A DNA stretch of 64,000 nucleotides from Heteronotia binoei. Lineage: Eukaryota. The translations under genes and the position numbers were made by a program. The notes under the pieces are model-generated. The model ran no database searches, was not told where the DNA came from, and worked only from the letters and a program-made list of their open reading frames with translations. Positions 26,430-51,143 of the stretch are shown piece by piece (within the stretch, counting starts at the first letter, position 1; the number at the start of each line of letters is the position of its first letter). The stretch lies in NCBI RefSeq assembly GCF_032191835.1, contig NC_083235.1, forward strand, positions 62,620,001 through 62,684,000. The letters are read 5' to 3'.

Positions 26430-27921
26430 AATTGAAGCTCACTGACATCATAAACAAATTGTGGTTTCTTCCTGTTTCTGAATACAACCAACCTCAGGCA
26501 GAAAGTAAGAGTCATCTGGTTAGCTCTCTCTTGGAAATGTTATCAGACACAGTGTACATGTTTGTGTTACTAGATCTAACAGTTTATGTTACTAGATCTG
26601 ACATGGTTGATTTTGACCTTATGGCCCACCACCTTGCTGAGGTGAGGCTAAGAGGAGCTCCTTTGTAGTGACTTACCTCGTTTCCCCATGGATGGGAGCA
26701 GAGGATGGCGATTGAGGGGAGGCTTTCACCAAGCTACCCTCTGACGTGCAGCATTCCATAGGGGACATTCCTCTTCCCTATATTGTTTAACATCTATACG
26801 CACCCCCTCGCTCAACTGATCTGGAGGTTTGGGCTAGGTTGTTGCCAGTATGCTAATACCCAACTGTATCTGTTGATGGATGAGTGACTGGATACTGCCC
26901 CAGAGGTTCTGGCCAGGACATTAGAAGCTGTGGCTGGGTGATTGCAGCAGAGCTGCCTGAAACTGAATCGATCAAAGATGGAGGTCCTGTGCCTGAGTTG
27001 CGGAGAGGTGCATTTAGGGATCCAGGTCCCAATGCTCGATAGGGTATCACTGACTCCAACAGCGAGGAGTTTGGATGCCTCACTTGCTATGGAGGCCAAG
27101 GTCATGGCCATTGCCAGAACAGCTTTTTACCATCTTCGGCTGGTCAGGCAATTGGTTCCCTCTCTTTCTCCCTGTGACCTAGCCACAGCCAACCTTTCAA
27201 TGGTCACCTCCAGGCTGGATTACTGCAACTTGCTCTATGCTGGGCTGCCCTTGTGGTGGTCTTGGGAACTCCAACAGGATCAAAACGCAGCAGTGCATGT
27301 CCTTACAGGGGCACCTCTAAGAGTGCATACCCGACCAATGCTCTGCCATTTGCATTGACTCCCGGTGAAGTACTGAATCCAGTTCAAGGTTATGGTATTG
27401 TCCTACAAAGTTCTGAGAGGTTGGGGACCTATATATCTACAGAACCGCTTCTCCTGCTATGTCCCTTGAAGAGCATTACACTCATCCAAACAACAGCTGC
27501 AAGTGGTCCCTTCTGAAGAACATCCATTTAGCCTCAACCAGAGCCTTTTCAGCTCTGGCCCCAGCCTGGTGGAACACTCTCCTGAGTGAGACCAGAACCC
27601 TGTGTGATCACCTTCTGTTCCACAGGACCTGTAAAATGGAGATGTTCCACCAGGCCTTTGGCTGAGGCAACAGGTGTCTCATTTATTCTGGCCTCCTCTG
27701 CTCTACCCCCTGACCTGGTATGTTTAGCGACTACTGGAGGTGATTCCCCACTGCTCTGTTTAATCTTGAGCAGTTTTATAGACTTATAGGAGAGCACTCC
27801 TAGGTTTGTGAGCCATCTTGCCGTATCTAATGCCTAAAAATTTCTAGAACTATGAAATATTGTTATTGTATTATCTGTGTTTTTAATTGCTGTGAGCTGC
27901 CCTGAACCCAGTGTGCGGGGA
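26430..27921 (+). mobile_element. Degenerate L2 LINE 3' part; its tail is split by the Copia and resumes at 31641-31685
   Basis: LLDL...DMVDF RT relic; MVTSRLDYCNLLYAGLP; tail tgtgagctgccctgaaccc...gggga|gggga aaggcggg...aaataaataaa. Confidence 0.85.
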
Positions 27922-28319
27922 TGTCGGAGCGGGAGTAGCAGAGTGAGGGAGATGACTTGCCCGACACAGGGCTTCAGGAAAGAAAATCAGGCAGACACGT
28001 GCAACTAGTGCCAAAAGGTGTATTAACATATATACACAACAAGTGCTCTCTTGTGCAGTCTATACAATATCACCTCCACGGACAAAGTGCTTCGCCTAAC
28101 CACCATCTCACAGGGAGATACCTGTGTGATGCACACACAGATCATATATAGTCCAAGCAGCCAATCCTGGCCGTGCTGACTCAGCAGATTGCATCACTTG
28201 GCTTCTGCCGGCTCAAGCCGGTCTGCTGATCAGGTCACTGTGACCTAGCCTGGCAGCTAGATCACCAGCTGTCATACTGTAGCTGTCAGACTGGGTTTAT
28301 GTAGATTCTTGCTCCAACA
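27922..28319 (-). repeat. Copia 3' LTR (398 bp)
   Basis: No mismatch to 31243-31640 found by eye; preceded on minus by the PPT agattaggaggtg (28332-28320). Confidence 0.97.
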
Positions 28320-28404
28320 CACCTCCTAATCTATTTAAACCCAGTGCACCAAAACACTTTACACAGTTTACATACATGTCCACCTGCAACATTACAGTTC
28401 ATAT

Positions 28405-31065
28405 TTACGTAGCTCGGAACCCTTTCCGGAATTCGTTCAGGAACTCATCATGATTGTAAAACACATCATCGTGTTCCTGTTCAGCCAGCTCTTTCAGACG
28501 CTTGGCTTCAGCCTCCTTCTCCCTTGCCTCGCACTCTGCCACCCAGGCTTTCCATTTCTTAGCCTTTTCTTTTAACATTTCCTCAAATCCGGGTGGGTCT
28601 GGATTGACAGTCAGAGTGACATAGGGACACTTGTACCTAGCGGGACGTTGGCCTTTGGTGGACCTGGCAGACACCCGTGGCCCTGTGCTTGGACCAGCTT
28701 TGTCTTCTTCGGGTTGCTCTGTTCCCACCTCCTGGGCTGGTTGCTCTGCCCCTGTAATTGGGTGTTGAACCTCCTGACTCTCACACTTTACCTCCAGTTC
28801 CTGCATTTGAGGCTCTGCCTCCTGACTCTGCTCGTCAGGCTCTGTGCCAGCATTCGGCTCACCTTCTCCAGCCCCACTGGGTGCCACCTCCTGGGCTGGA
28901 GTTCTGGGCTGCGCTCCAACATCGTTATCGCTACTTGGCAGCAGGACAAATTGTTTCTGCAAGGAGTGCAACCTTGGCCAGCTGCTTTCTTCATTGAACT
29001 GGGCACTCTTGCTAAGTGTTATCTTGCATTTGCTATTGCAGAAACGATAACACCTGGCCCTTGGCTTGTAGCCCAGAAAAATTAGGCTCTCTGCCCGGAC
29101 ATCCCCCTCCCCGCTACTCGTGGAGTGGATGCCAACCCGAGCCCGTGACCCAAAGACTTTTAAAGAACTCAAATCTGGGGTCTTGTTCAACAGTAACCTG
29201 TAAGGCACATTTTTCACAGTATTACACCAAACCCTATTTTGCAAAAAAACAGCTGCATGTATGGTTTCTGCCCAATAGGTCATTGGCAGTTGTGCATCCT
29301 CTAACATGCAATACATCACATTCTGCAATACAGCCCCATGCCCATTTTCTCGGGGCGTTGCCGGGTTCGTCAGACGGTGGGCGATGCCCTTGTTCTCCAG
29401 CCAACGTTTCATCTGGTTAGATAAGAATTCCCCCCCTCTGTCGGTTTGTACAGCTAGGAGATTAACCCCTAATTGTCTCTCCACTGCTTTGACCCACTTG
29501 GTGAATGTCTTATGCACCTCAGACTTATGCACCATGGTGAAAACCCACGCGTACCTCGTGTGGTCGTCGGTGGCCACCAAGCAGTATCTCCTCCCCGACA
29601 GACTCTTTGGCAATGGGCCAATAACGTCTAAATGGACTAGTTCCAGGGCTCGTGTGCTTTCCCTTGAGCTTTCTTTAGCAACAGCACACGCCTTGCTTTT
29701 GGTCTTCTTGCAGACCTGGCAATCCAAGTAACATTTGCAAGGATTTACTTTCAAACTAGGCACAAGCTCCAGGGTTTTCTTTAACGCCCTAAATCCGCAG
29801 TGCCCAAGTCTCCTATGGAGCAAATGTATACAATTATTGTGCACAGGCTCATTCGACACCTGAGCCACCTGGGCACAATCACTCTGGACCACATACAGTT
29901 TACCTTCCCTCTTTCCTGTCACAAGCAACTTTCCCCCACCTCCCAGGATTTTGCAGCAGGTTTTCTCAAATCTCACCTGGTATCCCTGGTCAAACAGTGT
30001 ACTAACACTCAACAGGTTAGACTGCAGTGAGGGTACATACAACACATTTTGCAACATACAGTTCAGTGCAGGAAATTCCACATTGCCTGAGCAAACAGAA
30101 TTGGCAGTGGTCCCATCAGCCAATCTCACATACTTATGCTCAGGACTGTCAATGTTTTTCAACAACTCCTTCTCGCAGCAGAGATGGCTCGTTGCCCCGG
30201 AGTCTAAAATCCAAGCAGACCCTGTGCTCTCTACTGCAGACGTGACCAGCCGGGTTGCTTCCTCACACGGGCTGGCGGTCCTCCGCTCTCGCCGCACACG
30301 CCCCCGCCTCTTCTCCCTCTCAGGGCAAGCTCGGAGCAGGTGCTGCGACGACCCGCATCCATAGCAGCGACGGACTGCAAACGCAGTCGGCTCCACTTCC
30401 TCCACCTTCGGACGCCTGCCAGCAGCAAAAGCTGGCTCGTTCTTGGCTGTCTTCCCGGACACACCGATAACAGCACGCTGCCCGGCCGACACCCCCGGAC
30501 AGCTCACGGCCGCAATTCTCTCTTGGAAGTCAAGCAGGTGGGCACAGACGTATTCCATGGTCAGGGTCGCTACGTCCACCGTCTCCAGAGAAGTTATCAG
30601 GGGAGTGTACTCAGGTGGCAACGACGACAGCAAAATGTACACTCTGTCGTCTGGAGCTACAGTCTTGCCTCTTGCCTCCAGCTCAACGAAACAGTCCGTT
30701 AGCCGTTTGATGTGATCTTTCACACACCCTCCAGCCGGCATAACGGTGCGGAACATCCTCCTTGTCAAGGCCATGAGGGAACCAGCAGTGGTGCTAACAT
30801 GCACCGCACTCAACGCGTCCCAGGCAGCCTTGGGAGTGTCCTTCCCTCGCACATAAACCAGCTGGTCATCTCCTATAGATAGCACTATGTTGGCCAGTGC
30901 CTTATCCGATAACACAGTCTCGGCAGGAGATAAGTCAGCAGGGGGGTTACTCTCGAACAGCCATTGCCCTTCACGCTTGAGGTAGTGTTGCATTCTCAGG
31001 CTCCACACCGCGTAGTTGGCTGAGGTGAGCTTCTCAACGGCTACTCCAAGCTGTTGCTGAGCCAT
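28405..31065 (-). CDS. Copia Gag-protease-integrase polyprotein, 886 aa, no RT/RNase H
   Basis: Copia Gag (NYAVWSLRM, ILLSSLPPEY); zinc knuckle CYGCGSSQHLLRAC; protease WILDSGATSH; HHCC (LHRRLGH...CQVC); integrase core HLDVIGP and QTDRGGEF; stop shortly after the pre-RT linker. Confidence 0.93.
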   Translation of the reverse strand: MAQQQLGVAVEKLTSANYAVWSLRMQHYLKREGQWLFESNPPADLSPAETVLSDKALANIVLSIGDDQLVYVRGKDTPKAAWDALSAVHVSTTAGSLMALTRRMFRTVMPAGGCVKDHIKRLTDCFVELEARGKTVAPDDRVYILLSSLPPEYTPLITSLETVDVATLTMEYVCAHLLDFQERIAAVSCPGVSAGQRAVIGVSGKTAKNEPAFAAGRRPKVEEVEPTAFAVRRCYGCGSSQHLLRACPEREKRRGRVRRERRTASPCEEATRLVTSAVESTGSAWILDSGATSHLCCEKELLKNIDSPEHKYVRLADGTTANSVCSGNVEFPALNCMLQNVLYVPSLQSNLLSVSTLFDQGYQVRFEKTCCKILGGGGKLLVTGKREGKLYVVQSDCAQVAQVSNEPVHNNCIHLLHRRLGHCGFRALKKTLELVPSLKVNPCKCYLDCQVCKKTKSKACAVAKESSRESTRALELVHLDVIGPLPKSLSGRRYCLVATDDHTRYAWVFTMVHKSEVHKTFTKWVKAVERQLGVNLLAVQTDRGGEFLSNQMKRWLENKGIAHRLTNPATPRENGHGAVLQNVMYCMLEDAQLPMTYWAETIHAAVFLQNRVWCNTVKNVPYRLLLNKTPDLSSLKVFGSRARVGIHSTSSGEGDVRAESLIFLGYKPRARCYRFCNSKCKITLSKSAQFNEESSWPRLHSLQKQFVLLPSSDNDVGAQPRTPAQEVAPSGAGEGEPNAGTEPDEQSQEAEPQMQELEVKCESQEVQHPITGAEQPAQEVGTEQPEEDKAGPSTGPRVSARSTKGQRPARYKCPYVTLTVNPDPPGFEEMLKEKAKKWKAWVAECEAREKEAEAKRLKELAEQEHDDVFYNHDEFLNEFRKGFRAT

Positions 31066-31211
31066 CGTGCCGACTCCTCCTCACGGCTGGCTGCCGACGT
31101 CCCTCTGGCTCTCAAACAGAGAACGGTGGTGCTTCTGTGTCCTTCACCGGCGTTCCTCGCCTCCGGCTCTTTCCAAACTCACAGTCAGCTCAACTCTCAA
31201 CTCTCTCCTCC

Positions 31212-31242
31212 GCGCAGCGGAAGCGTCCTGGGCCCATAACCC
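31212..31242 (-). other. Copia primer-binding site complementary to the 5' half of initiator tRNA-Met
   Basis: Plus strand GCGCAGCGGAAGCGTcCTGGGCCCATAACCC matches tRNAiMet nt 10-40 at 30/31; minus strand contains the copia PBS core GGTTATGGGCCCAG. Confidence 0.93.
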
Positions 31243-31640
31243 TGTCGGAGCGGGAGTAGCAGAGTGAGGGAGATGACTTGCCCGACACAGGGCTTCAGGA
31301 AAGAAAATCAGGCAGACACGTGCAACTAGTGCCAAAAGGTGTATTAACATATATACACAACAAGTGCTCTCTTGTGCAGTCTATACAATATCACCTCCAC
31401 GGACAAAGTGCTTCGCCTAACCACCATCTCACAGGGAGATACCTGTGTGATGCACACACAGATCATATATAGTCCAAGCAGCCAATCCTGGCCGTGCTGA
31501 CTCAGCAGATTGCATCACTTGGCTTCTGCCGGCTCAAGCCGGTCTGCTGATCAGGTCACTGTGACCTAGCCTGGCAGCTAGATCACCAGCTGTCATACTG
31601 TAGCTGTCAGACTGGGTTTATGTAGATTCTTGCTCCAACA
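31243..31640 (-). repeat. Copia 5' LTR (398 bp)
   Basis: No mismatch to 27922-28319 found by eye; followed on minus by the PBS. Confidence 0.97.
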
Positions 31641-31940
31641 GGGGAAAGGCGGGAAAAACATCTAACTATTAAATAAATAAATTTATAAAACACTAGAACA
31701 AAGTCGGAGTCAAGTATCACCTTTAAGACCAAAAAGGTTTTAAAGGTGCTACTTGTCTCCTGCTTTGTTCTACTGCTTCAGACCCAACACGGCTGCCCAC
31801 CTGGATTTATAAAACACTGATAGTCAGAGGCTCAAAAAGAGTGAATAAATTCTTTGGCTCAAGCACAAATGGTTCAAGGAGTTTTGTCACACCAAATAAG
31901 GTACAATTTTACCCTCTTCTCCCAATGTCTGAACACCACA

Positions 31941-32302
31941 ACAGTTTGGTGTAGTGGTTAAGTGTGCGGACTCTTATCTGGGAGAACCGGGTTTGATTCC
32001 CCACTCCTCCACTTGCACCTGCTGGAATGGCCTTGGGTCAGCCATAGCTCTGGCAGAGGTCTTTAAAAGGGCAGCTGCTGTGAGAGCCCTCTCCAGCCCC
32101 ACCCACCTCACAGGGTGTCTGTTGTGGGGGAGGAAGGGAAAGGAGATTGTGAGCCGCTCTGAGACTCTTCGGAGTGGAGGGCGGGATATAAATCCAATAT
32201 CATCATCTACCTCACAGGGTGTCTGTTGTGGGGGAGGAAGGGAAAGGAGATTGTGAGCCGCTCTGAGACTCTTCGGAGTGGAGGGCGGGATATAAATCCA
32301 AT

Positions 32303-32380
<78 letters not shown>
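31941..32380 (+). mobile_element. tRNA-headed SINE (family A) with a twofold 104-bp tail and (CAT)n microsatellite
   Basis: Tail units start at 32103 and 32207; about 26 ATC units at 32303-32380. Confidence 0.9.
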
Positions 32381-50926: not shown

Positions 50927-51143
50927 AGGGGAGGGACGGTGGCTCAGTGGTAGAGCATCTGCTTGGGAAGCAGAAGGTCCCAGGTTCAATCCCTGGCATC
51001 TCCAAAAAAGGGTCCAGGCAAATAGGTGTGAAAATCCTCAGCTTGAGACCCTGGAGAGCCGCTGCCAATCTGAGAAGACAATACTGACTTTGATGGACCA
51101 AGGGTCTGATTCAGTATAAGGCAGCTTCATATGTTCATATGTT
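50927..51143 (+). mobile_element. tRNA-headed SINE, Squam3-like, young
   Basis: A-box tggctcagtggtagagc, B-box ggttcaatccc; (TTCATATG)-type tail. Confidence 0.82.

What the first reader, a model, noticed from the sequence alone, without database searches (positions are those of the whole stretch)
31212..31242. Exceptionally long 31-nt half-tRNA PBS whose limits coincide with tRNA modification sites
Seen: 30/31 match to vertebrate tRNAiMet nt 10-40, directly abutting the LTR. The match stops exactly at G9, and the single mismatch is at conventional position G26. Established: Drosophila copia primes with a 5' fragment of tRNAiMet using a PBS of only about 15 nt. Mammalian tRNAiMet carries m1G9 (blocks pairing and RT) and m2G26. 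Inference: plus-strand synthesis reads through G26 with misincorporation and stops at m1G9, so the PBS is a DNA imprint of the host tRNA modification map. It also implies anticodon-arm cleavage products of tRNAiMet in this lizard germline. The gecko modification state is assumed, not seen.
Basis: partly seen in the sequence, partly recalled or inferred. Interest (0 to 1): 0.78.

Follow-up and report, generated by a model that had tools for sequence, protein, structure and literature searches.

The report
Extra-long half-tRNA primer site in Copia
A very young, reverse-transcriptase-less Copia retrotransposon in this lizard has a primer-binding site that pairs with 31 bases of the front half of initiator tRNA instead of the usual 14; it is a real and unusual variant of known "half-tRNA" priming, but the idea that it records the tRNA's chemical modifications is only partly supported.

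Summary
Window 31212-31242 (+) equals human initiator tRNA-Met nt 10-40 at 30 of 31 positions. The one difference is at 31227, opposite conventional G26. The stretch abuts the inner end of the 5' LTR of a minus-strand Ty1/Copia element (27922-31640). That element has identical 398-nt LTRs, a GGGGA target duplication and a gag-PR-IN ORF without RT.

It is the primer-binding site (PBS) of a copia/Ty5-type half-tRNA-primed element. It has the usual core plus a 16-nt block that pairs with the whole D arm. Six distant relatives with a half-tRNA site all stop after 14 nt, just before G26, so 31 nt is exceptional.

The "modification imprint" reading is partly supported.
- For: m1G9 is a documented RT stop. 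In one related RNA run the contigs break exactly at 31227, the signature of a polymorphic site.
- Against: m2G26 leaves no RT signature and is barely present in human tRNAiMet.
- Against: the same non-complementary G follows the 14-nt core in two distant relatives.
- Against: positions 9 and 26 are also the tRNA's domain junctions.
- Against: a 9-nt U5 motif pairs with nt 1-9, G9 included.

The scan had already noted this site type on other DNA of this genome. Some of those unverified notes describe perfect 32-nt matches.

The parts
31212..31242 (-). Primer-binding site, 31 nt, complementary to tRNAiMet linear nt 10-40 (conventional G10-C41) with one mismatch
   Evidence: Predicted duplex energy with the 40-nt tRNA half is -68 kcal/mol, against -31 for the 15-nt core alone.
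31228..31242 (-). Core block (anticodon stem-loop, tRNA linear 26-40). It matches the 14-nt PBS of copia-type relatives plus one extra G at the LTR side.
   Evidence: relatives L001, L002, L003, L057, L060 and L061 carry GGTTATGGGCCCAG directly after the LTR end.
31227..31227 (-). Single non-complementary base opposite conventional G26 (element sense G, window + strand C)
   Evidence: In run X1 the long contigs end at 31226 and restart at 31228, and the bin depth is accounted for by two 61-nt bubble arms. This indicates a polymorphic site.
31212..31226 (-). Extension block, 15 nt perfectly complementary to the D arm (tRNA linear 10-24); absent from all relatives found
   Evidence: No relative has a second block of 8 nt or more within 300 nt of its PBS.
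31258..31266 (-). U5 motif CACTCTGCT (element sense), complementary to tRNA nt 1-9. With the next two bases it also resembles the tRNA 3' acceptor strand CTCTGCTAC. A second copy lies at 27937-27945 in the 3' LTR.
   Evidence: The chance of a 9-mer match within 60 nt upstream is about 2e-4. Duplex energy is -15 kcal/mol.
31243..31640 (-). 5' LTR (398 nt, TG..CA)
   Evidence: 100% identical to 27922-28319.
27922..28319 (-). 3' LTR
28405..31065 (-). 886-aa ORF with gag, protease-type beta-barrel, pre-integrase, integrase core and SH3-like domains; no RVT_2 or RNase H
28320..28332 (-). Putative short polypurine tract (AGATTAGGAGGTG in element sense) next to the 3' LTR
   Evidence: by position and composition only.
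27917..27921 (.). Target-site duplication GGGGA (second copy at 31641-31645)

Best explanation
The stretch is the minus-strand primer-binding site of a very young, non-autonomous (RT-less) Ty1/Copia element that uses the copia/Ty5 mode of priming. A 5' fragment of initiator tRNA-Met, ending at linear C40 (conventional C41), anneals next to U5, and its 3'-OH starts minus-strand DNA.

This family differs from ordinary half-tRNA elements because the usual anticodon-arm core (15 nt) is followed by a contiguous block that pairs with the entire D arm. A 9-nt U5 motif can also pair with nt 1-9. Together these cover 39 of the 40 bases of the tRNA half.

The block limits (9|10 and 26) are the hinges between the acceptor strand, D arm and anticodon arm. 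These are also where the methylated guanines sit. The extension more than doubles the predicted primer-binding energy. It most likely serves primer capture, and possibly plus-strand transfer, in an element that must borrow its RT.

The base opposite G26 is a tolerated, heritable and polymorphic mismatch at the hinge. It need not be a fresh misincorporation.

Shown: the sequence identity, the position, the length, the absence of the extra blocks in relatives, and the variability of the G26-opposite base in a related run. Inferred: the cleaved primer, the function of the extra blocks, and the cause of the limits.
For: - 30/31 match to the published tRNAiMet sequence, abutting an LTR with TG..CA ends and a 5-bp duplication.
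- Copia-type gag-PR-IN ORF.
- Six distant relatives carry the half-tRNA core GGTTATGGGCCCAG directly after their LTR and nothing further.
- Duplex energies are -68 kcal/mol for the 31-nt site and -31 for the core alone; the U5 motif gives -15.
- The U5 motif is unlikely by chance, about 2e-4.
- A G after the core is shared with L001 and L002 and is stable between two copies of each family.
- With identical LTRs, a post-insertion change at that one site has a probability of roughly 0.1%. The mismatch was therefore carried in at integration.
- Bipartite or extended primer sites are known in Ty1 and Ty3, and half-tRNA priming in copia and Ty5 (PMC5371799).
Against: - No primer, cDNA end or tRNA modification was observed.
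- The species' own tRNAiMet was not seen.
- If G26 is unmodified or m2G it pairs normally with C, so annealing alone gives no reason for a mismatch there.
- A polymorphism exactly at 31227 in run X1 is more easily explained if the tRNA is copied through position 26 at each cycle. That is part of the rival model.
- Simultaneous pairing of the U5 motif and the 31-nt site is sterically demanding: a 15-nt linker must span a folded-back pair of helices. This was not modelled.
Confidence: 0.6

Rival explanations
1. At every cycle, plus-strand strong-stop synthesis copies the attached tRNA half from C40 back to G10 and halts at m1G9. It occasionally writes a wrong base opposite modified G26. The PBS is therefore continually rewritten and is a DNA record of the host tRNA's modification map.
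For: - Human tRNAiMet carries m1G9, m2G10 and m2G26 (PMC7293042).
- m1G causes high RT arrest (PMC7144921).
- For HIV-1, m1A58 is required for the plus-strand strong stop, and genome-tRNA complementarity tracks a second stop site (PMC8599865).
- In run X1 the only clean single-base break of the contig path falls exactly at 31227. It is one of only two breaks in about 3.3 kb of internal sequence, and the bin depth fits two bubble arms.
- The mismatch is not a post-insertion mutation.
- A 15-nt perfect tRNA-derived block is hard to obtain other than by copying the tRNA.
Against: - m2G gives no appreciable RT signature.
- G26 is little modified in human placental tRNAiMet, with no evidence of m2,2G.
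- m2,2G would cause arrest as well as errors, and known RTs then write A/T rather than C.
- G follows the core in distant relatives and is constant between copies.
- Unverified scan notes report copies with a perfect 32-nt match that includes the base opposite G9.
- The U5 motif places a C opposite G9.
Confidence: 0.25
2. The extension is a neutral relic. A single aberrant read-through or template switch once inserted tRNA-derived letters after the core PBS in the ancestor of this non-autonomous lineage. The letters persist only because the lineage is young.
For: The extension is absent from every relative found. The family in hand is RT-less and very young.
Against: - The block is perfect over 15 nt.
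- It co-occurs with an independent 9-nt U5 motif complementary to the remaining tRNA bases.
- Relatives 3-5% diverged in RNA runs lay across this region, so the arrangement has persisted through divergence.
Confidence: 0.1
3. The mismatch is only apparent. The lizard has a tRNAiMet gene variant with C at position 26, so this PBS is a perfect 31-nt match to its own primer.
For: The species' tRNAiMet was not seen here.
Against: The other 39 positions of the human sequence are reproduced by the PBS plus the U5 motif. Unverified notes describe perfect matches to the standard sequence elsewhere in this genome. From general knowledge, vertebrate tRNAiMet is invariant and position 26 is normally a purine.
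Confidence: 0.05

Closest known systems
Drosophila copia and yeast Ty5 (genus Hemivirus, Pseudoviridae): half-tRNA priming
   Same: The PBS lies directly after the 5' LTR and is complementary to the anticodon stem-loop of initiator tRNA-Met rather than to its 3' end (PMC5371799; ICTV profile PMC8515867). It has the same core letters as six relatives found here.
   Different: The complementarity is 31 nt rather than about 14 and runs through the whole D arm to G10. It starts one base later in the tRNA (linear 40, not 39). A further U5 motif matches nt 1-9. The element has no RT or RNase H.
Bipartite or extended primer sites of Ty1 (boxes near the PBS) and Ty3 (5' PBS plus U3)
   Same: Several separate blocks of genomic RNA pair with different arms of tRNAiMet, in addition to the block that positions the 3'-OH (PMC5371799).
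   Different: Ty1 and Ty3 use the intact tRNA primed from its CCA end, and their extra blocks pair with the T and D arms. Here the blocks pair with the 5' half only, and two of them are contiguous.
Retroviral 18-nt PBS bounded by m1A58 (HIV-1 / tRNALys3)
   Same: The end of the complementarity lies next to a Watson-Crick-blocking methylated purine of the primer. The logic is that plus-strand strong-stop DNA must match the genome (PMC8599865).
   Different: The stop site would be m1G9 of a tRNA 5' half. No stop was mapped here, and the same position is a tRNA domain junction.

Membership tests
Ty1/Copia (Pseudoviridae) LTR retrotransposon | Two LTRs with TG..CA ends and a 5-bp target duplication | tested here: met
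   398-nt identical LTRs and a GGGGA duplication.
Ty1/Copia (Pseudoviridae) LTR retrotransposon | Copia-type gag, protease and integrase domains, with integrase ahead of RT | tested here: met
   Pfam hits: Retrotran_gag_2, Pol_BBD, gag_pre-integrs, rve and SH3_retrovirus, in that order.
Ty1/Copia (Pseudoviridae) LTR retrotransposon | Reverse transcriptase (RVT_2) and RNase H | tested here: not met
   No RVT_2 hit. The ORF ends 85 nt before the 3' LTR. The element is a non-autonomous derivative.
Half-tRNA-primed Copia (Hemivirus type) | PBS complementary to the anticodon stem-loop region of tRNAiMet, adjacent to U5 | tested here: met
Half-tRNA-primed Copia (Hemivirus type) | [quoted passage not shown] | tested here: not met
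   31 nt here, against 14 nt in L001, L002, L003, L057, L060 and L061.
Half-tRNA-primed Copia (Hemivirus type) | The primer is a cleaved 5' tRNA fragment of about 39-40 nt found in particles | not testable with these tools
   Needs small-RNA or VLP data.
Half-tRNA-primed Copia (Hemivirus type) | Phylogenetic placement by RT | not testable with these tools
   RT is absent. The nearest proteins in the databases are only about 30% identical, though most of them carry the half-tRNA core.
PBS bounded by an RT-stop modification (retroviral m1A58 rule) | A Watson-Crick-blocking modification in the primer just beyond the last paired base | tested here: inconclusive
   m1G9 is documented for human tRNAiMet. 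The gecko state is unknown.
PBS bounded by an RT-stop modification (retroviral m1A58 rule) | Plus-strand strong-stop DNA ends at that base, and the tRNA copy is inherited | tested here: inconclusive
   The only evidence is the indirect polymorphism signature at 31227 in run X1. Ty1 is reported not to inherit the primer sequence (reference title).
Bipartite/extended PBS (Ty1, Ty3) | Extra blocks of complementarity to the primer outside the priming block | tested here: met
   D-arm block 31212-31226 and U5 motif 31258-31266.

The most novel reading that the evidence does not exclude
In this lizard lineage the PBS is rewritten from the primer at every retrotransposition. Its far end marks the m1G9 stop, and the variable base at 31227 marks a modified G26. 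Genomic copies would then form a natural record of germline tRNAiMet modification. The long PBS would be an adaptation of half-tRNA Copia to hosts whose initiator tRNA lacks a hard stop at position 26.
Probability: 0.2. Interest if true: 0.75.

Novelty: new variant of a known kind. Interest (0 to 1): 0.55.

Why it matters
Half-tRNA priming is a poorly understood corner of reverse transcription. How the primer is cut, and what sets the PBS length, are unknown even for copia and Ty5. This family's primer site covers almost the entire 5' half in three blocks, inside an element that must be mobilised in trans. That gives a clear handle on both questions. It predicts a defined 40-nt tRNAiMet fragment. 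It also predicts a plus-strand stop either at position 27 or at position 10. If the stop is at G10, the retroviral m1A58 rule would extend to a second modification, m1G9, and to a second family of retroelements. PBS length could then be read as a proxy for the modification state of a host's initiator tRNA.

Tried and rejected
- **Close relatives by protein.** The full ORF found nothing above about 32% identity. The gag part alone found one 30% hit. The family is not in the protein collection.
- **Exact look-ups of two short ORFs** from the LTR/PBS region, meant to reach other copies: nothing on record.
- **Scan of viral contigs for the core motif:** only bacterial or phage initiator tRNA genes and chance hits.
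- **Scan of metagenome contigs for CA plus the 15-nt core:** 30 loci, none with a long site. L028 and L054 appear to be tRNAiMet genes, and a few loci look like short Copia sites.
- **Rfam:** no tRNA match, so the stretch is not a tRNA pseudogene.
- **Read laying.** The alleles at 31227 and 31211 were therefore not seen.
- **Host organisms of the relatives** could not be identified. The prediction 'vertebrate = long, invertebrate = short' is untested.
- **Papers not held:** Lauermann & Boeke 1994 and 1997, and the pCal paper. Only the title of the 1994 paper is used.
- **Post-insertion mutation** as the cause of the mismatch is rejected, at about 0.1%.

Full report
**What is there.** Window 31212-31242 on the + strand reads as the sense sequence of initiator tRNA-Met. 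PMC8216282 prints the human initiator tRNA-Met. The window matches its linear nt 10-40 at 30 of 31 positions. The one difference is at 31227, where the window has C and the tRNA has G. This tRNA has no nucleotide 17, so linear 25 is conventional G26 and linear 40 is conventional C41. The neighbouring bases do not match on either side: CC against U8-G9, and T against the base after C41. No shuffle of the window gives such a match.

**The element.** The tRNA-sense letters are on the + strand, so the element lies on the minus strand.
- The LTRs are 27922-28319 and 31243-31640. They are 398 nt, identical and TG..CA-bounded, and are flanked by a GGGGA duplication.
- The PBS abuts U5 with no spacer.
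- The only long ORF (31065 to 28405, 886 aa) has Copia-type gag, protease barrel, pre-integrase, integrase core and SH3-like domains, but no RT or RNase H. The element is therefore non-autonomous.
- With no difference in 796 nt of LTR, the insertion is at most a few million years old. A post-insertion change at one given base has a probability of about 0.1%. The mismatch was therefore present when the copy integrated.
- Rfam finds no tRNA here, so this is not a tRNA pseudogene.

**How unusual it is.** No close relative exists in the protein collections, so I fetched the DNA of distant relatives of about 30% identity.
- L001, L061, L002, L062, L003, L057 and L060 each carry GGTTATGGGCCCAG directly after the LTR end. 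L056 carries the same motif with one mismatch.
- In all of them complementarity to the tRNA stops there, immediately before G26.
- The next base is G, G, A, T, T or T, and never the complementary C.
- L058 uses the ordinary 3'-end site.
- None of the relatives has a second block of 8 nt or more complementary to the tRNA half within 300 nt.
- A metagenome scan for the core preceded by CA found only short sites and apparent tRNA genes.

The gecko element keeps the core, starting one tRNA base later, and keeps a non-complementary G opposite G26. It then adds 15 perfect bases that pair with the whole D arm. It also has CACTCTGCT in U5, 15 nt upstream of the PBS. That motif is complementary to tRNA nt 1-9, with a chance of about 2e-4. 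Predicted duplex energy rises from -31 kcal/mol for the core to -68 for the full site. The U5 motif alone gives -15.

**How it most likely works.** By position and sequence this is a copia/Ty5-type site: a 5' fragment of tRNAiMet anneals and primes from an internal 3' end (PMC5371799; PMC8515867). Here the primer would end at conventional C41. The three blocks correspond to the three structural parts of the tRNA half:
- acceptor strand plus nt 8-9;
- D arm, nt 10-25;
- anticodon arm from nt 27.

My preferred reading is an extended, multi-block primer site of the kind known from Ty1 and Ty3, adapted to a half tRNA. It holds the primer much more tightly in an element that depends on a borrowed RT. 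These functional statements are inferences. No primer or cDNA end was observed.

**The modification-imprint idea: evidence for.**
- Human tRNAiMet carries m1G9, m2G10 and m2G26 (PMC7293042).
- m1G causes strong RT arrest (PMC7144921).
- For HIV-1, m1A58 is needed for the plus-strand strong stop, and genome-tRNA complementarity tracks a second stop site (PMC8599865).
- A perfect 15-nt tRNA-derived block is most easily made by copying the tRNA, and a copy that ends at G10 is what an m1G9 stop would give.
- In RNA run X1, which holds relatives about 97% alike, three long contigs tile the element. Two of them end at 31226 and begin at 31228. This one-base gap is the signature of a single-nucleotide bubble in a k=31 graph.
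- The depth of that bin in X1 (172.7) equals the two flanking contigs plus about 113 depth units over 61 nt, as expected for the two bubble arms. In X3 the bin depth is explained by two contigs with no bubble.
- This is one of only two breaks in about 3.3 kb of internal sequence, so the base opposite G26 is very probably polymorphic among otherwise identical copies. I could not see the alleles because the table was truncated.

**The modification-imprint idea: evidence against.**
- m2G gives no appreciable RT signature.
- G26 of human placental tRNAiMet was only little modified, with no evidence for m2,2G.
- A modification strong enough to cause errors (m2,2G) also causes arrest, and known RTs then write A/T, not C.
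- The same G follows the core in L001 and L002 and is unchanged in a second copy of each family.
- The best-studied Pseudoviridae member, Ty1, is reported not to inherit the primer sequence (reference title).
- The U5 motif places a C opposite G9, which an m1G could not pair with.
- Positions 8-9 and 26 are hinges of the tRNA fold whatever their methylation.
- The polymorphism at 31227 is equally explained by a heteroduplex. One strand would be copied faithfully from the tRNA and the other from a genome that carries an inherited mismatch.

**Earlier notes of this scan.** The same type of site was already noted on other pieces of this genome. One follow-up reached the same 'unusual but recognisable variant' verdict. 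Two unverified notes describe perfect 32-nt matches to nt 9-40. If these are true, the G26 mismatch is copy- or subfamily-specific, and the far limit is not fixed at G10. I could not read those windows.

**Verdict.**
- The site is a new variant of a known kind.
The m1G9 limit is plausible but confounded with tRNA architecture. The G26 misincorporation is not supported by what is known of m2G.
- The inference of a defined tRNAiMet 5' fragment rests on analogy with copia.

Noticed in passing
window 27922-31640: The RT-less architecture is not private to this copy. In RNA run X1 a single 1089-nt contig, about 95% alike, spans 28316-29404, from the LTR edge into the ORF with no RT in between. Contigs of three RNA runs tile the element. 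The non-autonomous form seems to be a propagating, transcribed lineage.
   Followed up: partly
window 31258-31266 and 27937-27945: The U5 motif CACTCTGCT is complementary to tRNAiMet nt 1-9. With the next two bases it also reads like the tRNA 3' acceptor strand plus discriminator (CTCTGCTAC). It is absent from all relatives examined.
   Followed up: partly
L001, L002, L003, L056, L057, L060 (upstream of their gag): In six distant Copia lineages, the base after the 14-nt half-tRNA core (opposite G26) is G, G, A, T, T, T and never the complementary C. The sample is too small to test.
   Followed up: partly
window 31657-31760: The DNA just outside the insertion has very high contig depth in all runs (up to about 2000), with many loose ends at 31694-31742. 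It is an abundant interspersed repeat.
   Followed up: no
window 50932-51004: ARAGORN calls a tRNA-Pro with the unusual anticodon GGG. It may be a SINE head or a pseudogene.
   Followed up: no
window 32100-32307: Tandem duplication of a 104-nt unit at 98% identity.
   Followed up: no
window 28230-28309 and 31551-31630: An 80-nt hairpin inside the LTR gives a sub-threshold resemblance to a miRNA precursor model (20 bits against a threshold of 58, E 0.59). This is most likely chance.
   Followed up: no
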